NCBI GenBank assembly: GCA_904063045.1
Contig: CAJFCJ010000006.1
Coordinates: 248,001 to 312,000, forward strand
Source of the DNA: Dimorphilus gyrociliatus
Lineage: Eukaryota > Animalia > Annelida
Direction: 5' to 3'
DNA: 64,000 nucleotides
Part shown: positions 31,400 through 40,148 of the stretch, in pieces
Numbering within the stretch: the first letter of the stretch is position 1
How the letters are laid out: each line of letters begins with the position of its first letter
Notes under the pieces: generated by a model
Seen by the model: the letters and a program-made list of their open reading frames with translations, nothing else
Database searches by the model: none
Told to the model about the DNA's origin: nothing
Position numbers and translations under genes: made by a program

Positions 31400-32550
31400 A
31401 TAAAGGAAAAAGATATGATTATAGAAAATTGATAAGAAAATACAGAGTTTTTGTATACTTTAATTAGTAAATGTCGCTTATATAATTAAATAAAAGTGTG
31501 TAGAGAAGTTGAAGAATGATGTCACCATCTTTAGAAAAAAGTTCGATAAAGGTCTCCTTAAGAGTTTTCTTACGTCTAATTTGCATAATGATTTTATACA
31601 TTTTTTTTTACTCTATCACAAGCCTTAAAAAAATGCTATTTGCATAGATAATAATTTTACTGATAATGATGTAGACAGTTATATATAAAATATCTGAAAT
31701 CGATAATTTTATTAGAAGTACTAATTGGAAACACGTTGGAGAAAGAGAGTAGGCGAAAGAGGAAAATTATCAAACGAAAGATAGAAAATAAGAGAAAGCA
31801 GAGTAACTATACGGAAAGCTGTAAACCCTTTCTAATAGAATCTTGGTCATTCTATCAACTGAACAAGAATATTTAAATAAGCAAATAATAGAAATAGTTT
31901 GAAGAGGAAAAAAGGGAAAGCAAAGATAGAAAAGACTTCATCTTACTTTAATACAAAGAAAAGAAAGGAGAAGAAAAGCTTTCTTCAATCAATCAAAGAA
32001 TAAGAAACCAAATTAAATCAAAAAAATTAAAATTAATCATCAAACATGACCAAATTTTTTCTATATTTCTACATTTTCTTAACAGTTGTAACTCTTATTT
32101 CACCATTTAGTAAGTTTTTTTTATTTTTTCTTTTTTCATTTTTATCATTTTTATTCCCTATTCTTTCTTTCTCTCTCTCTCTCTCCCACCTCTCTTCCTC
32201 TCCCCTCCTCCCCCCCCCCCCGCTACATCATCTCTCTTTCTCTCTCTCCCATGTCTTTTCCACATATTGATCTTTTTTTTTCATTATTTCTTTCTTTTTC
32301 ATCTCCAATTCTCCTTTTGAACTTTAATATTTTTTGTTTTTTTCTTAGTTTTTTTTACATACTTCCTTTAGAGATATAAGCTTCTATTATGAATAATTAG
32401 AATTTCTTACTGCGTAATATTCAGTATTTGTCAATTAAACTTTGTCTGAAAGTAAATAGAAAATTAGGTGCAAGAGGAGAATAATCTCGTTAAATTCATT
32501 CATAAGTGCGTACAATTTATCGAATGTTGTCTAGTGATTTATTTAAGGTA
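31400..32550 (+). repeat. Segmental duplication copy 1 (promoter, 5'UTR, signal exon and part of intron 1 of peptide gene A)
   Basis: Collinear similarity to 37550-38680, including a 59-bp identical block (31674-31732 = 37821-37879). Confidence 0.9.
31579..31690 (+). promoter_or_regulatory. Peptide gene A promoter: two octamer motifs ATTTGCAT (31579, 31638) and TATA box (31680-31690)
   Basis: Motifs read directly; positions conserved in the paralogous promoter. Confidence 0.6.
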
Positions 32551-32561
32551 GATTAGAGATA

Positions 32562-32605
<44 letters not shown>

Positions 32606-33453
32606 AATGCCAATATATGCTCTTGCTGGACAAACATTGCCAATGAATAATAGATAAGAATCGAATAGATTACTATTTTAAAACTTATACATATATATAT
32701 ATATATATATATGTATAACTAGTTAAACTCGAAAGAGAAAAGAGATTAACTTCTGTGTTTTTTTTCCCCTCAGTTCTCCAGGCGAAAAATGAGTCGTTAT
32801 CACAAACGGTAAGGTTCCTTTTTGATTTATATTTTACCTTCTCGTAATAAAGTTATTATATTAAGTAAGATTAATAGGCTATTAGCGGAAAAAATTTCTT
32901 TAATCATAAACATTCAAGTGTTTCTAATGAACGAATCAGCTACAAAATGTAGATCAATATTTTCTTATCTCTTTTCCAGTACAAGAAAAGAACATATTGT
33001 AATTTCTGCGTATTTTTTCTATTTTATTAATAGAGTGTCTAAAAAATATCCAGGTACAGGCTGTTATCTGTACTACATGTGAACAATTATTTGTTTATTG
33101 TAGCAATCATGCCCTGGAACTGGTGACTGCGATTCGCAATCAAAATGCTGCGACGATGATGTAGGAGGTGGATGCTGTCCCAAAGATTATGGTTTGTGTT
33201 GTCAAGATGGAGTAAATTGTTGTCCTAGTGCCTCTCCTATCTGCTGCCAAGGACTCGACAATAACCATTTTTGTTGTGATGACAACTCTTTTTGTTGCTT
33301 GGGAATGTGTTGTTTATCAGAAGGACAGGTAAAACAATTTGAACAGCGTTTTCAATATTTAAATGATCTATGAGAAATTAATCTAATTTTTGCATGATAA
33401 ATCAGAAAACCATTCCCGTGCTGGCAAAGAATAGATTACCGTTTTTAAATTGA
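32046..33453 (+). CDS. Secreted 18-Cys extended granulin-like peptide A (exons 32046-32109, 32774-32808, 33104-33328, 33406-33453; intron 3 read-through stop at 33373)
   Basis: Phases 1/0/0 match. MTKFFLYFYIFLTVVTLISPF-ILQAKNESLSQT-QSCPGTGDCDSQSKCCDDDVGGGCCPKDYGLCCQDGVNCCPSASPICCQGLDNNHFCCDDNSFCCLGMCCLSEGQ-KTIPVLAKNRLPFLN. Exon 1 and 2 lengths identical to paralog B. Confidence 0.85.
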
Positions 33454-35284
33454 TGAGGCTTGGTGGAGAGAGGAGCGAGATTGTTGAAAAAACATGAAGA
33501 AAGAAAAAAGAAGAAAAAAAAACTCTTTCTCTCTTTCAATTCGATTCTCTCAGTCAAAATTAATTATTTTTATCTCTGTTATAGAAAATTAGCTTTTCTT
33601 GATATCTAGCCTTTCTCAAACATGATTTAATTCAATACAGTAGGATTTCCAAGTAGTCTAACTATAAATCTTATCCTATTCAATTTCCTTTTGTCTCTTT
33701 TCCACCATCTCTGACTAATTCCCACTGATCATTAAATTGTCAGCTAATTCACATGTAAATTTGAGAGAATATTTTCTCAACGTTGATTGATTTATAAATC
33801 TTTTGTTCATTTGTATAACTCTGTTTTAAGGGAAGAAGAAAATCAACTATCTTTTGATTAAATACATTTTATTATAAACACAAACATTCGAATAATTACT
33901 GAAATTTATATTTATATATCTATTGTTACCGCACAAGAAAGACTTTCACATTATCTCATTTTTCTCTTTCATATACGATATTATTATTACGCAATTGTAA
34001 GAATAACTGTATCAAAATTAAAGCAAACAAACATTCAATAAACATTTATAAATTGTTTTGCCTCTCAACCTATATCACTTTTGTGTGATTGTAATATCGT
34101 CCTTGCAATTTCTTTGAAAGTTGACCGAATTGTCCTTGAAAATAAAACAAACTGTTTCAAAGCGTTATTAATTTCTCATCGTATTAAATAAACTGTTTAT
34201 TTATCTTCTTACTCGTAAATAATACTACTTTCACTCGAGTTATTTTGTTTTTATCACTTAAAAAATAATAAACAAATATGATAAATTAAGAATGGAAAAA
34301 TACCCTTAAAGCAACTATAATCTATAATTTATAAAAGTTTAAAACAATTGGCCTAATATAAAGAGAAAATTAGTAAAACAATCAATTATAAAAAAAGACT
34401 GATAATGAATGAAAAATGCATAACAAACATTTCTTGTTTAAATAAGTGATAACCAAGAAACAGAAACCACTACTATCTATTCTCCTTAAAGTATACACAA
34501 TACCGGATAGCATTGAACTATAAAAGAGGCCATACAGCGTTCGATAGTTATCAAGGTGAAACACGTTATTCTTAATGGTCCGAGGTTACGTATTCTTTCG
34601 AATAGCTGATATGCGTAATATCTGATAATTATGTGTACACAATAAACAATTTTCCTTTGTGTTTATTTTAGATAATACACTCAAGATTTAAATATTTTGA
34701 CTGGAAGCAACTACGGAAGCTTAATAAACTAGGCTTTGCTATCAATTATTTAGCAATTAAATTTAAAAGGTCATCTTTCGTTTTAATCTGGGTTAACAGG
34801 AATTTCTTTTACCCTGATAAAATTAAACCTCAATTAAAGATGCTACTTAATCTACTCAAGGAATTAGGTAATATAGAAGTGGTACGCTAACGTTCGTAAC
34901 GAGTTCATAATTTGGTTAAAGAAACAATTGAGAATAATTGAGTATGACGATGCTCACATCGTGTGAGGTCCGCTGATATCTTCCTGATATCTCTGATAAA
35001 TCGCCTGAGTAAAAGGAAAAAATAGCATCGAACGATATGATATACCACATACCACGATTAACTGAATTTAGAAAATCAAAAAGAAGCATTATAATCGAGA
35101 TATGAAAAAAAAAACTTTAATTTCTACGAGTACGGTAGGCTAAAGAATGTTAACAATTTCCCCCTTTTTTTTCTCTCTCACTATTTGATGGCAATTTTTT
35201 AGAACTTTGAGAGAGTTTGTAAAGCAATACGAAAGAAAGCAACGAAATTTAACAGTAAAAAGTGATAATATTTAGAAAAGTTGC

Positions 35285-35360
35285 AAATAGAAAGAGAAAG
35301 AAAGAAAGAAAGAAAGAAACTGGTAGGCAGGCAGGCATGCAAGCAGATAGACAGACAGAC
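35285..35360. repeat. Compound tetranucleotide microsatellite (GAAA)n-(GGCA)n-(GACA)n
   Basis: Read directly. Confidence 0.85.
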
Positions 35361-37549
35361 AGCAAACATATAGAGAGGGGGAAAAGAGGAAAAGAGAGAC
35401 CGACAGAGAAACATATAGAAGGAAGGAGAAAAATTTACAAAAGATATCTAAAAAGAGTAAGTAACACACCTGATGTATAAAGTATACAGTATATGGGTTG
35501 CGTGCACATAAAAAAACCTTCTGTAGTTTTCTTATCAGACACTGAACCAATTTCCAAACTTGTAGAATTTCAATCAAATTTTGTTAAAAGTAGAAGAGAG
35601 AGAAAGACAAAAGTAGTTTAGACGTAATTCCTTCATTTAAAATATTTCTTTAATTATAAATTAAATACTTTTACATATGAAAATAAAGATGAAAAATTAA
35701 AAATAGGTTAAATATTTCAATATTTAATTAAGCTAATAGTAAATTTTTATAAAATACATTACATGTAATTAATAACATACGTTAAGACCAATATAAAATT
35801 GAACAAGTATTCTCAGATTACATACTTTTTAATATATAAAGAAATTTTTTGAAATTAAAAATATATTCATATTTCTATTTAATAAATCTTTATTGATCTT
35901 CTCTCTCTCTCTCTTTCTTTCTTTTTTTCTCTACTTTTACACTTGCACTATAATTAAATAATAGAATACTTTTTTCAAGTCCTTTTTAGGAACTGATTAA
36001 GATTTTCGATTTTTCTTTTTAAAAAAAATAGGAAAGTCGTTAAAAAAGAAAAAGAATTCAGCTAAGAAATGATGAAAACATGCAGATATTCAACTTTTTA
36101 GGTTATCGAATTTAAATATTTAAATTACTAAAACTTAAATGTTTTTAAAAGTACACACAGATCAATTAGCTTTTATGATAAAATAATTCGACCTAGACAG
36201 GTATGCATCAAGGACATAACACTCAGAAATTTTTGAGTAATATATTACAGAAGAGGGAACTGTATTGATGGAGTTGGGAGGAGTGGGAGGAGTGAGGGGG
36301 GGGGGGGCAAGGGGATAGTATTAAAGGGGGTGCTGACATCTTTTGATAATTTGTAACATAAACATATAAATAAACCCGATCAATTGATGTTCTATACTCT
36401 TCTATAAACGGTGTGCTAAATGTTTATGTAAATTGCGTGTGTGTAATTATAAGCATCTAACCTCTATCTGACAGTATAAAAGAAATTATTAAAATTAGAA
36501 TTTTTCAATTAATTATATAAAAATTAAAATTTTCCATACTATATATTTTCATAATGGAAGAAAGATAATACAATATCTTCTTTTTACAAATAGTTTGTAT
36601 ATCAATTATACAATTGATAAATTAAATATGTACTCTTTTTTTATCCTTGAAAATCAAGAAGTGCTTTAGAATATTTTGGGAATAGGCTGTCAATATATAC
36701 AGATATATTAATATATATATATATATATATTACATTGTAGCTTGATAGCTCATTCATGCATTCATTTATCATGAGGAAAGAAAGCTTATGCTTTTATCTC
36801 TTTTTCTTATTTCTCCAAAGAAAACATGTTAATGATACTTGTAAAATAAGAAGCAAAAGAACTGGGTGGCGTGGGCGAGAGTTTAAAAGAAAAAATAGAG
36901 AGAGAGAAAAGGAGAAATGGAGGAGAGAACTTGATAAATAGAATATCTTTTTTTTATCTTTATACTTATTTTCTAAAAATATAAGAGTTAAATTTATCAT
37001 ATAGGCGTTACTTGAATATAAAAAGCTATTTCTAGATTAATATATTCATAGAAGTGCTCGTTTTAACTTTACAAATGATTAAATCTTAATATAGTAATAA
37101 TAAAAACATTATATAAAAGGAAAGATTCTTCTGCAATATCATTCATTAAATGAGAAACTTCATAAGAAACTCGAACTGATCATCAATCATTCAAACATAA
37201 TAGTATATCAATTATAAACATTTATACAAAAATCAATGTAAAGCTTCTGAATATAATTAGTTTCCGGATACTCTTACCTGTTCTTAAACAGGCCATCATT
37301 TGTAATGCATATATGAAGGATAAGTTACCCTCACCTAAAAATATCTCAATAATATATAAATACTGCGCTAATGAATAAGAAACATTCCCAAATCAGAAAA
37401 ATTTATTCATAAATTCATTTCCGATTTATTTGGGTTAATAAAAGGTTAAACAAGTAACACAATATACAAGGGATGCGCATGATAAAAAAAAGTGACGTAA
37501 GCTTATCTAATTCACCAGGTTCTTTTTCACCTAAACCTTGAGAAAAATA

Positions 37550-38340
37550 AAAGATATATTTGGACTAAAATTGATAAGAGCGACAGTATTTTTTTGTTTG
37601 ATTTAATTAGCAAATGTCTCTTATATAATTAAATAAAAATTTGCGCTAGCAATTGAGGAATGATGTCAATATTTCCAAAAAAAAATAAGTCCTATAAAAA
37701 GTCTTCTTAAGAGTTTCTTTACCGTCTAAATTTGCATAATAAGATTATTCTTCTTTTTTTTGTTCTATCAAAAGCCTACAAAATATACTTTGCATAGATA
37801 ATTCTACTGATAATTACTTGGACAGTTATATATAAAATATCTGAAATCGATAATTTTATTAGAAGTACTAATTGGAAACTCGTCGAGGAAAGAGAGTAAG
37901 AGAAAGGGGAAAAAGGAAGAATTAATGAACGAAAGAGCAAAATAAAGTAGAGAATAGGGAAGAAGAGTAACTACATAAGAAAGTTATAAACCCTTTCTAA
38001 TAAAATCTTGATTCTTCTATCGACTTAACAAGAATATTTAAATAAGTAAATAATAGAAATAGTTTGGAAGAAGAAAAAAGAAAGCAAAGATAGAAAAGAC
38101 TTCAATTAACTTTAGGAGAAAAGAAAGCAAAAGAGAAGAAAAGCTTTTTTCAATCAATCAATCAATCAATCAATCAATGAAAGAATAAGGAAAAGAATTA
38201 AATAAAAAAAAATTAAAATTAATCATCAACATGACTAAATTATTTCTTTATTTCTACATTTTCTTTACAGTTTTAAATCTTATTTCAACATTTAGTAAGT
38301 TTTATTTTTTTTTACCATTTCTATTTTCGTTTCTCTCTCT

Positions 38341-38375
<35 letters not shown>

Positions 38376-38680
38376 CTGTGTCTTTTCCATTTATATATTG
38401 ATCTAATTTTATCATTATTTTTTTTCCATCTCTTTTCTTCCTTTCAAATTTTCTTTTTTGTTCTTTTTTGTGTGTTTTAGTATTCGCTAAATTCCTTCTT
38501 CAAGTGGCTTTTTTTACTATGTTTCTATTTATAGACAATTAGAATTTTTAACTGCGTAATAATCTAATCAATTTTTTTGTTTATGATAAATTGAATGGAA
38601 AATTGAGAGCAAAGAATTGAATAAAGATCCAATTCATTAATAAAACTACAGTTTTTATCGATGTAATAAGTGATTTGACC
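37550..38680 (+). repeat. Segmental duplication copy 2 (promoter, 5'UTR, signal exon and part of intron 1 of peptide gene B)
   Basis: Collinear with 31400-32550. Confidence 0.9.
37730..37837 (+). promoter_or_regulatory. Peptide gene B promoter: octamer ATTTGCAT (37730), variant CTTTGCAT (37788), TATA box (~37827-37837)
   Basis: Homologous positions to the gene A promoter. Confidence 0.6.
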
Positions 38681-40148
38681 ACAGGCCATATAGACAATGA
38701 TTATCTATAAATAAAAAAGTTGACATAGAAGCAAAGAGAGGAAAAGAGAGAGGGAGGGAAGGGGGTGAGGGGGACGAAGAAAAGAAAAAGAGCAAGATTT
38801 ACTGTATATATATGTACATACATGGAAAAAAACGGAAAAAAACCCAGAATTTTCTCCTTAATAAATATTCAAATACGACTAATAAATGTTATTCTTTAAT
38901 AACATTTATTCAATGTTTATTTAATGTGAATTAAATATTTGCTTGTGAAAACAAAATATAATAATATGATATTTCTACAGAAACATCTGAAATCCTTGAA
39001 AAGGCCACTGGAAAAGTAAGTATTAATATATTGCTAACTACTTTTTATACTTGTACGAATTAGCTTCATTTCAATTTAAAAGTGAAATTAGCAATTTTAT
39101 ACTTGAAAAGAGAGAAATGAACGAATATTGTAGCAAAGCCAATTTCATATCATGTAATATGCTACTAAACTCTCTATCGCTGTTCTTATTCCAAATTTAT
39201 ATAAATTACCTTTATTTATTTATATATTTTGATAAGTTATAGTAATATATCAAGTATGTAATTAATAAATTTCTATCTTTCGCATGAATTCACTATTGTT
39301 TATTGTTTTTTATGCATGATAGAGATGAAAAATTTTTAATATACGGAGCTACCATGCAAAAATAGTCAGTAGCCTTGAGGAATTTGACCTTAAAAACATT
39401 TTTAGAAATAAAATTCAATATAGATTTGTCCATATTTATCAATTTCAGAATATATTTAACATTATTTTTTATTCCTCCTCCACCACCTCCTCCTCCTGCT
39501 GTTTCAGTAGCATAGTTATACAGTATAGATATATTGTATGTATACAATTTTACAAGATATCAATAGTCGTATTGCTATCTTTTCAAGTTGATTATTTGAT
39601 ATGTAAAATTATAAAATTACTCTTTTTTTTTGTTTTGCGGTTTTTATTTATATGGAAAAAGATACAAAACTGTTATCACCGTACTTTGAAACAATTACTT
39701 CCTTTCCCATAATCTATTATGACATATTTTTTTCTAATATCATATCTTTTTATAGACGGAATGCGAAGGTGGGATTGGAACTTGCGGTATTCAACTATTT
39801 TGCTGCGATAGAGAATCTGGAGGCGGTTGCTGTCCAAAGGATTACAGCATGTGCTGTCGTCAGACTAGAAGTTGTTGTCCTGGTTCAGCGCCTATATGCT
39901 GTACTAGTATCCTAAATGGTAACTATTGCTGCAACGACGAAGCATATTGCTGTTTAGGCGGATGCTGTTTTGAAGGAAACAAAGTAAACAAAAATACATT
40001 TAAAACCTGGAATAAACTATTCCAACTGCATTACAAACTAATGCATTTTTTTTTTAATAGTATAAATCAGAAATCATTAAAGCAGTTCTCAGACGAGGTT
40101 ATACAAACAACGATAACGATAAAAGTTAAACCTTTCCAGCTTCTTTAA
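38231..40148 (+). CDS. Secreted 18-Cys extended granulin-like peptide B (exons 38231-38294, 38981-39015, 39756-39983, 40071-40148)
   Basis: MTKLFLYFYIFFTVLNLISTF-KTSEILEKATGK-TECEGGIGTCGIQLFCCDRESGGGCCPKDYSMCCRQTRSCCPGSAPICCTSILNGNYCCNDEAYCCLGGCCFEGNK-KSLKQFSDE...; same exon phases and Cys spacing as A. Confidence 0.85.

What the first reader, a model, noticed from the sequence alone, without database searches (positions are those of the whole stretch)
32046..40148. Pair of secreted 'extended granulin' peptides with a C-C-(CC)x8 scaffold and toxin-like gene architecture
Seen: two four-exon genes absent from the ORF track as complete proteins. Both mature exons have 18 Cys spaced C-x5/6-C-x5-CC-x7-CC-x6-CC-x5-CC-x6-CC-x8-CC-x5-CC-x3-CC. 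Known: the first half (CCPKDYGLCCQDGVNCCP) matches the granulin motif, but a granulin module has 12 Cys with four CC doublets and ends in single Cys. Here the doublet ladder continues for four more rungs, which could form a longer stacked beta-hairpin with 9 disulfides (inference). Signal, spacer and mature regions sit on separate exons. By hand alignment the signals are 16/21 identical, but non-Cys mature residues only about 18/58. That conserved-signal, variable-loop pattern is typical of conotoxin and antimicrobial peptide families (inference). Peptide A is strongly acidic, B much less so. This may be an undescribed family of secreted venom, defence, growth-factor or cement peptides.
Basis: partly seen in the sequence, partly recalled or inferred. 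Interest (0 to 1): 0.8.

Follow-up and report, generated by a model that had tools for sequence, protein, structure and literature searches.

The report
Secreted peptides with a lengthened granulin ladder
The tiny marine worm Dimorphilus gyrociliatus has two neighbouring, unannotated genes, plus a third elsewhere, for small secreted peptides that look like a granulin growth-factor module whose stack of paired cysteines runs to 18 cysteines instead of 12; this is a rare variant of a known scaffold, and its expression and function are untested.

Summary
Window 33104-33328 (A) and 39756-39983 (B) each encode one exon with 18 Cys in the pattern C-C-(CC)x8. Each follows a hydrophobic signal exon and a 35-nt spacer exon, and all splice sites are canonical. 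A fourth exon and transcripts could not be verified.

The genome is Dimorphilus gyrociliatus. A third paralogue (C) on another scaffold is the public uncharacterised protein DgyrCDS385. A and B are absent from the protein collections searched.

The first 44 residues (10 Cys) are homologous to the granulin module (hhalign 97.7%, E 1.9e-12). A profile search of 1.84 billion proteins hit almost only progranulins. Pfam Granulin itself scores below its cutoff.

Several hundred hit modules have four CC doublets. Only DgyrCDS385/384 has eight, and two metagenomic proteins have six and seven.

AlphaFold (pLDDT 70.7) puts a short strand at most CC doublets (six of the eight). The only PDB chains reaching Z>=2 are granulins, and weakly (Z 3.1).

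The "conserved signal, variable mature peptide" pattern is not toxin-like selection. A 1-kb block of mostly non-coding DNA around exon 1 is as conserved as the exon itself, so recent gene conversion or partial duplication explains it.

The scan had already noted paralogue C (s1-084487) and a six-doublet pair (s1-082639) elsewhere in this genome.

Verdict: a new variant of a known kind, of moderate interest.

The parts
31425..32419 (+). Gene A 5' homology block: about 620 bp upstream, exon 1 and about 310 bp of intron 1. It is shared only with gene B.
   Evidence: blastn gives 79% over 834 columns. Identity by sub-region is 78-92%. Genome-wide, the only other full-length copy is at gene B.
32046..32109 (+). 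Gene A exon 1: start codon plus a 21-residue hydrophobic signal-like peptide. The exon ends in phase 1.
   Evidence: Maximum Kyte-Doolittle mean over 12 residues is 2.37. The donor reads GTAAGT.
32774..32808 (+). Gene A exon 2: 35-nt spacer that restores phase 0.
   Evidence: Acceptor is a pyrimidine tract plus CAG, and the donor reads GTAAGG. It has the same length and phase as exon 2 of B.
33104..33328 (+). Gene A exon 3: 75-aa module with 18 Cys, C-C-(CC)x8, net charge -9.
   Evidence: Pfam Granulin scores 8.5 bits. hhalign against granulin modules gives 97.7%.
37567..38561 (+). Gene B 5' homology block, the counterpart of 31425-32419.
38231..38294 (+). Gene B exon 1: 21-residue signal-like peptide, 16/21 identical to A, ending in phase 1.
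38981..39015 (+). Gene B exon 2: 35-nt spacer.
   Evidence: CAG acceptor and GTAAGT donor.
39756..39983 (+). Gene B exon 3: 76-aa module with 18 Cys on the same scaffold as A, net charge -3.
   Evidence: Pfam Granulin scores 8.8 bits.

Best explanation
A and B are two tandem, unannotated members of a three-gene family in Dimorphilus gyrociliatus. The third member is DgyrCDS385 on another scaffold.

Each gene encodes a small secreted protein with three parts: an N-terminal signal peptide on its own exon, a short Cys-free spacer, and one 75-76-residue module.

The module derives from the granulin/epithelin module. The first 10 Cys keep granulin spacing and the flanking G/P residues. The two single Cys that normally close the granulin ladder are replaced by four more CC doublets.

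By analogy with the granulin disulfide pattern, this gives nine disulfides (1-3, 2-5, 4-7 ... 14-17, 16-18) and a longer stack of short beta-hairpins. This step is inference.

The rigid rod would display the variable inter-doublet loops. It most likely acts outside the cell by binding a protein target, as a ligand or inhibitor, as other free granulin-fold peptides do. This step is also inference, and no target is known.

The near-identity of the A and B signal exons comes from a recent gene conversion or partial duplication of about 1 kb covering the promoter, exon 1 and the start of intron 1. It is laid over an old duplication.
For: Anatomy:
- The Cys spacing is identical in A, B and C, with 33 invariant columns.
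- Splice sites are canonical and exon lengths and phases are equal in A and B.
- The public five-exon model of C has the same signal-exon phase and the same Cys-exon borders.
- N-termini are hydrophobic.
- Frames are intact and pN (0.30-0.36) is below pS (0.61-0.81).

Granulin descent:
- An exhaustive HMMER search of 1.84 billion proteins gave 47 hits. Nearly all are multi-module progranulins matching profile positions 2-45.
- hhalign against 31 granulin modules gave 97.7%, E 1.9e-12, over columns 3-46.
- PDB sequence hits are granulins only.
- ESM Atlas nearest clusters are all Granulin.

Extension:
- Several hundred hit modules have exactly 4 doublets. Only DgyrCDS385/384 has 8, P0027 has 7, P0037 has 6, and one module has 5.

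Fold:
- AlphaFold2 on paralogue C gave pLDDT 70.7, with a short strand at six of the eight doublets (the last six), through the extension.
- Of 48,161 PDB representatives, only two reach Z>=2, and both are granulins (Z 3.1 with 52 residues aligned; Z 2.0).

Conversion:
- The 5' block is 78-92% identical including non-coding DNA, while the Cys exon is 55.6% identical at nucleotide level.
- The block occurs only at A and B.
- B's Cys exon is closer to C (46/75) than to A (36/75).

Precedents for binding roles: the leech granulin thrombin inhibitor (PMC12131632) and the granulin-like domain of alpha-D-conotoxin bound to AChBP (PMC10133702).
Against: - There is no transcript evidence for A or B. 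Both are missing from a public annotation that weighted transcript assemblies heavily (PMC7854359).
- Pfam Granulin scores only 8.5-11.9 bits against a cutoff of 20.9.
- The C-terminal half alone shows no significant similarity to granulin (6.5%).
- The structural evidence is weak: pLDDT is 60-71, Foldseek finds nothing below E 0.38, and the best Z is 3.1.
- The 31 granulin modules used for hhalign were picked as best hits of the same profile, which inflates that E-value.
- The 3' end of A and B is unresolved.
- Function and disulfide pairing are pure inference.
Confidence: 0.6

Rival explanations
1. A and B are silent or decaying duplicates of the expressed paralogue C. They are real sequence relics, not working genes.
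For: A and B are absent from the 15-billion-protein collection, while C is present as DgyrCDS385/384. The public annotation used transcript assemblies with high weight (PMC7854359). No last exon could be found.
Against: All 18 Cys, all six splice sites and both start codons are intact. pN is below pS although synonymous sites are saturated, so constraint has lasted a long time. Short multi-exon genes are often missed by annotation pipelines.
Confidence: 0.15
2. The CC ladder is a convergent scaffold that shares no ancestry with granulin.
For: Pfam Granulin scores below its cutoff. The C-terminal half has no granulin match. Cys-rich profiles attract each other because of composition.
Against: The profile hits are almost exclusively granulin modules out of 1.84 billion proteins. 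They align column for column over 10 Cys plus the G before doublet 2 and the P after doublets 2 and 4. Six- and seven-doublet proteins share the same core motif and bridge the two forms.
Confidence: 0.08
3. The peptides are building blocks of a disulfide-cross-linked extracellular material such as mucus, cocoon, cuticle or adhesive, and not soluble ligands.
For: Cys content is very high (24%). The mature part is acidic, and paralogue C carries a basic tail. Other readers of this scan noted granulin-like modules fused to chitin-binding domains in this genome (I did not check this).
Against: An even Cys count with strictly conserved spacing, and the granulin homology, favour intramolecular pairing. 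There is no repeat or low-complexity matrix-type region.
Confidence: 0.12
4. The peptides are venom or defence peptides evolving under diversifying selection.
For: The genes are tandem paralogues whose loops differ strongly. Granulin-like folds do occur in cone-snail toxins (PMC10133702, PMC11035057).
Against: Conservation of the signal exon equals that of the flanking non-coding DNA. dS is saturated and pN is below pS, so no positive selection is detectable. The peptides are anionic, unlike most antimicrobial peptides. As far as I know the animal is a microbial grazer with no known venom apparatus; I did not check this with the tools.
Confidence: 0.05

Closest known systems
Granulin/epithelin module (Pfam PF00396) of progranulin
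   Same: Secreted. Two single Cys are followed by CC doublets at nearly the same spacing (x5, x5, x7 instead of x8, x6, x5). The G before doublet 2 and the P after doublets 2 and 4 are conserved. Profile-profile homology holds over 44 residues. The predicted structure is a stack of short strands.
   Different: It has 18 Cys, not 12, and eight doublets, not four. No closing single Cys are present. There is one module per gene, not a tandem chain. It scores below the Pfam cutoff. The same genome also has a normal multi-module progranulin on scaffold C19.
DgyrCDS385 / DgyrCDS384 (Dimorphilus gyrociliatus, uncharacterised; P0002/P0003)
   Same: Same scaffold, same signal-exon phase and same Cys-exon borders. 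The Cys exon is 58% identical to A and 61% identical to B.
   Different: It lies on another scaffold, has an unrelated signal peptide, carries two spacer exons and has a 34-residue basic tail exon. It is annotated, whereas A and B are not.
Six- and seven-doublet granulin-like proteins: the convergent pair on scaffold C2 (L004), P0037 and P0027
   Same: They share the core CCPK(D/Q)Y..CC-x5-CC(P/F)-x3-xP(I/V)CC and have more than four doublets.
   Different: They still end in two single Cys, like granulin. The L004 genes are split by an intron in mid-module. P0037 lies on a gene-dense, intron-free metagenomic contig, and P0027 lies on an unidentified metagenomic contig.
Free granulin-fold peptides with binding roles: leech granulin thrombin inhibitor, alpha-D-conotoxin C-terminal domain, mini-granulin conotoxins, liver-fluke Ov-GRN-1
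   Same: All are small secreted hairpin-stack peptides that act by binding extracellular proteins (PMC12131632, PMC10133702, PMC11035057, PMC13348780).
   Different: All have 12 Cys or fewer. No sequence relation closer than the general granulin one was found, and no activity is known for the Dimorphilus peptides.

Membership tests
Granulin (PF00396) | A 12-Cys motif: two single Cys, four CC doublets, two single Cys | tested here: not met
   The first 10 Cys fit. After doublet 4 come four more doublets and no single Cys.
Granulin (PF00396) | Pfam HMM score at or above the gathering cutoff of 20.9 bits | tested here: not met
   A scores 8.5 bits, B 8.8 and C 11.9. The genome's true progranulin scores 75.9 bits.
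Granulin (PF00396) | Significant profile homology to bona fide granulin modules | tested here: met
   47 hits in 1.84 billion proteins are nearly all progranulins, with per-module scores of about 11-21 bits on profile positions 2-45. hhalign gives 97.7%, E 1.9e-12. PDB sequence hits are granulins only.
Granulin (PF00396) | Stacked beta-hairpin fold | tested here: inconclusive
   AlphaFold2 pLDDT is 59.8 and 70.7, with strands at most doublets (six of eight in the better model). Foldseek finds nothing significant. In VIA-align only two chains reach Z>=2, both granulins, with a best Z of 3.1.
Granulin (PF00396) | Ladder disulfide connectivity (1-3, 2-5, 4-7 ...) | not testable with these tools
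   This needs mass spectrometry or NMR on folded peptide.
Granulin (PF00396) | Tandem modules in a progranulin precursor, with modules split into N and C exons | tested here: not met
   There is one module per gene, on one exon. The exon rule is loose in this genome, because some modules of its progranulin are also uninterrupted.
Toxin-type gene superfamily (conserved signal, hypervariable mature peptide under selection) | Signal region conserved beyond the neutral level of its surroundings | tested here: not met
   Exon 1 is 89% identical. The upstream 400 bp is 88-89% identical and the first 100 bp of intron 1 is 92% identical.
Toxin-type gene superfamily (conserved signal, hypervariable mature peptide under selection) | dN/dS above 1 in the mature region | tested here: inconclusive
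   pS of 0.61-0.81 is saturated. pN of 0.30-0.36 is lower than pS.
Metallothionein | Cytosolic protein without a signal peptide, with CxC/CxxC clusters and no aromatic residues | tested here: not met
   A hydrophobic signal exon is present, doublets are spaced x3-x8, and Y, F and H occur.

The most novel reading that the evidence does not exclude
The three Dimorphilus peptides are expressed and fold into one continuous nine-disulfide hairpin stack, longer than the stack of any granulin structure these PDB searches returned. If so, the granulin ladder is an extensible scaffold that evolution lengthens rung by rung: 4, 5, 6, 7 and 8 doublets are all seen. Relatives reach an unidentified eukaryote and a virus-like contig.
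Probability: 0.45. Interest if true: 0.6.

Novelty: new variant of a known kind. Interest (0 to 1): 0.5.

Why it matters
Granulin modules are studied as growth factors, wound-healing leads and toxin domains, and their ladder of disulfides is treated as a fixed 12-Cys unit. A natural 18-Cys version would show that the stack can be extended, and intermediates with 5, 6 and 7 doublets are seen. That would give peptide engineers a longer, very rigid rod with more displayable loops. It would also give evolutionary biologists a simple case of fold growth by adding rungs.

There is a practical lesson as well. Two of the three genes are missing from the public annotation of a well-studied compact genome. 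The 'conserved signal, variable toxin' pattern can be mimicked by gene conversion of a promoter-plus-signal cassette.

Tried and rejected
RNA and expression evidence:
- The look-up of sequencing runs returned one run of unknown kind holding 0.40 of the words, which is probably DNA.
- The CAGE and ATAC tables of PMC7854359 are truncated in the held copy and show nothing for this scaffold region.
- The differential-expression table uses gene ids that cannot be mapped to DgyrCDS385.

Searches with no result:
- A word-based protein search with exon A found nothing.
- IMG/VR viral contigs hold no relative.
- The candidate on scaffold C38 is spurious: it has in-frame stops and no Cys ladder.

Fourth exon:
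- No acceptor-plus-ORF downstream of A or B is conserved or resembles the tail of C.

Internal duplication as the origin of the extension:
- The only hint is doublets 6-7 resembling granulin doublets 3-4 (hhalign 6.5%). This is too weak to claim.

Structure:
- The first AlphaFold run mixed in canonical modules and gave pLDDT 59.8. Foldseek gave no significant hits for either model.

Readings rejected:
- Metallothionein and keratin-associated-type readings were rejected on the signal peptide and the Cys spacing.

Full report
WHAT IS THERE

The window is AT-rich animal DNA.

**Cys exons.** A six-frame scan finds exactly two frames with many CC doublets: 33104-33328 and 39756-39983, both on the plus strand.
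- Their translations are 75 and 76 residues long. Each holds 18 Cys spaced C-x5/6-C-x5-CC-x7-CC-x6-CC-x5-CC-x6-CC-x8-CC-x5-CC-x3-CC.
- They align with one single-residue gap, and 36 columns are invariant.

**Upstream exons.** Each Cys exon follows two small exons.
- The first is a 64-nt exon that starts with ATG and encodes 21 hydrophobic residues (32046-32109 and 38231-38294).
- The second is a 35-nt spacer exon (32774-32808 and 38981-39015).
- All six donors read GTAA. All acceptors are pyrimidine tracts ending in YAG. Lengths and phases are the same in both genes: phase 1 after exon 1, phase 0 after exons 2 and 3.

They check out:
- The signal peptides are 16/21 identical.
- Non-Cys residues are 18/57 identical.
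- Net charge is -9 for A and -3 for B.

**What could not be checked.**
- The fourth exon. Both Cys exons end at a good donor five residues after the last doublet, but no conserved downstream exon was found.
- Transcripts. The only sequencing run offered looks like DNA.
Those places lie in intron 1 of gene B. I sent none of their letters to any search tool afterwards.

ORGANISM AND FAMILY SIZE

**Third copy.** A search of the window's own 78-Mb, 349-scaffold genome found a third copy with the same scaffold on another scaffold (L002 1498-1725, minus strand). It is 58% identical to A and 61% identical to B.

**Public record.** An exhaustive HMMER search returned this copy as two public proteins, DgyrCDS385 and DgyrCDS384 of Dimorphilus gyrociliatus. 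They carry no functional name. The assembly statistics match the published genome (PMC7854359).
- The public model has five exons: a signal exon that also ends in phase 1, two spacer exons, the Cys exon with the same borders, and a 34-residue basic tail exon.
- This gives independent support for the exon logic proposed for A and B.

**A and B are unannotated.** A and B are not in the 15-billion-protein collection.
- Only three proteins scored below 1e-30: a giant progranulin and the two DgyrCDS entries.
- A word search with DgyrCDS385 found only itself and its isoform.

**No further eight-doublet copy.** No other eight-doublet copy exists in the genome. The candidate on scaffold C38 is spurious.

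RELATION TO GRANULIN

**Pfam.** Pfam's Granulin model is the only Pfam hit, but it scores only 8.5 to 11.9 bits against a cutoff of 20.9. The genome's true progranulin on scaffold C19 scores 75.9 bits. By Pfam's own rule these peptides are therefore not members.

**Homology in the other direction is clear.**
- The three-sequence profile, run against 1.84 billion representative proteins, gave 47 hits. Nearly all are multi-module progranulins from animals.
- Each module matches profile positions 2-45 at about 11-21 bits.
- MAFFT aligns the first 10 Cys, the G before doublet 2, and the P after doublets 2 and 4, column for column with 31 granulin modules.
- hhalign gives 97.7% probability and E 1.9e-12 over 44 columns. 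That figure is somewhat inflated, because the modules were chosen as the best hits of the same profile.
- PDB sequence hits at E below 1 are four granulins and nothing else.
- The nearest ESM Atlas clusters are all Granulin.

**The C-terminal 30 residues have no counterpart.** Taken alone, they match granulin at only 6.5%.

HOW UNUSUAL IS THE EXTENSION

I counted runs of CC doublets in every protein returned.
- Several hundred modules have exactly four doublets.
- One module has five.
- P0037 has six, P0027 has seven, and only the Dimorphilus proteins have eight.

P0037 and P0027 share the family's core motif, CCPK(D/Q)Y..CC-x5-CC(P/F)-x3-xP(I/V)CC, but still end in two single Cys.

The Dimorphilus genome also holds a convergent pair of six-doublet genes on scaffold C2 (L004), which match residues 31-70 of A. 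There is therefore a small, scattered group of lengthened granulin ladders, and the window's genes are the longest seen.

Full-text searches found papers on 12-Cys granulins, mini-granulin conotoxins and granulin-like toxin domains, but none on a longer ladder.

STRUCTURE

**First run.** AlphaFold2 with a mixed alignment gave pLDDT 59.8.

**Second run.** With only the five extended sequences and paralogue C as target, it gave pLDDT 70.7, rising to 73-82 over residues 31-70. Short strands sit at residues 30-33, 40-42, 47-50, 56-59, 63-66 and 69-72, so each of the last six doublets carries one.

**Fold searches.**
- Foldseek found no significant PDB match for either model.
- VIA-align against 48,161 representative chains found only two with Z of 2 or more, and both are granulins.
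- Zebrafish granulin AaE gave Z 3.1, rmsd 3.0 A, 52 residues aligned.
- The carp granulin-1 N-terminal stack gave Z 2.0, rmsd 1.5 A, 30 residues aligned, on model residues 31-62.

The scores are weak, but they point one way. The result is consistent with a hairpin stack that continues through the extension, and it is not proof. The nine-disulfide ladder pairing is inferred by analogy.

THE 'TOXIN-LIKE' PATTERN

A and B share a block of about 1 kb (31425-32419 and 37567-38561). It covers about 620 bp of upstream DNA, exon 1 and about 310 bp of intron 1.

Identity across the block:

| Region | Identity |
|---|---|
| Block edges | 78% |
| 400 bp before the ATG | 88-89% |
| Exon 1 | 89% |
| First 100 bp of intron 1 | 92% |

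- The signal exon is therefore no more conserved than its non-coding neighbours.
- The block occurs nowhere else in the genome.
- Exon 2 shows no similarity between A and B.
- The Cys exons are 55.6% identical at nucleotide level, with saturated synonymous sites (pS 0.81) and pN of 0.36.
- B's Cys exon is closer to C on another scaffold (46/75) than to its neighbour A (36/75).

The simplest reading is an old duplication followed by a recent gene conversion or partial duplication of the promoter-plus-signal cassette. No positive selection can be shown. Paralogue C has a different signal peptide.

FUNCTION

Nothing here tests function.

**What the anatomy says.** The product is a secreted, very rigid, mostly acidic mini-protein whose loops differ between paralogues while the scaffold is fixed.

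**Precedents.** Known free granulin-fold peptides act by binding extracellular proteins:
- Leech granulin inhibits thrombin (cited in PMC12131632).
- The granulin-like domain of alpha-D-conotoxin binds AChBP (PMC10133702).
- Fluke granulin drives cell proliferation (PMC13348780).

**My reading.** I take an extracellular binding role as most likely. A structural, cross-linked role is the main alternative. Silent copies remain a real possibility for A and B.

VERDICT

The granulin link and the four extra rungs are supported. The toxin-style inference is not. Expression, the 3' end, disulfide pairing and function remain open. This is a new variant of a known kind, and one member is already public but uncharacterised.

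Noticed in passing
L004 (G000:C2:4146706-4149810); exons at L004 2-109 and 325-480 (+), and 1652-1759 and 1417-1605 (-): A convergent pair of small granulin-like genes with 16 Cys in the pattern C-C-(CC)x6-C-C. Each is split by an intron after doublet 2. They share CC.DG..CCPS..P.CC with A. Pfam Granulin scores 15 bits on one C-terminal exon.
   Followed up: partly
L009 6001-6363 (P0049/P0037; ENA metagenome contig of 39.8 kb): A 120-aa, six-doublet relative with its own signal peptide. It sits on a 33.5% GC contig of tightly packed, mostly same-strand genes with no introns called in the gene table. Neighbours include a helicase with a Hint/intein domain, an AP endonuclease 2 and a RING protein. 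The contig looks like a giant virus, but no relative was found in IMG/VR.
   Followed up: partly
L012 6001-6360 (P0027; ENA metagenome contig of 208 kb): A 119-aa protein with seven CC doublets followed by two single Cys. It lies on a gene-sparse contig of an unidentified organism.
   Followed up: no
L005 (G000:C19:606819-609974): The canonical multi-module progranulin of this genome. At least seven exon matches score over the Pfam cutoff, and some whole modules are uninterrupted by introns, unlike the usual N-exon/C-exon layout.
   Followed up: partly
window 31425-32419 and 37567-38561: A 1-kb promoter-plus-signal-exon cassette that is 78-92% identical between two otherwise saturated paralogues. 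It is a clean local example of gene conversion or cassette duplication.
   Followed up: yes
Nothing was laid, and I sent none of these letters to any search tool afterwards.
   Followed up: no
P0011 (JGI metagenome, 294 aa): Five tandem repeats of a shortened granulin-like unit with only two CC doublets. It was among the profile hits at 21 bits per repeat.
   Followed up: no
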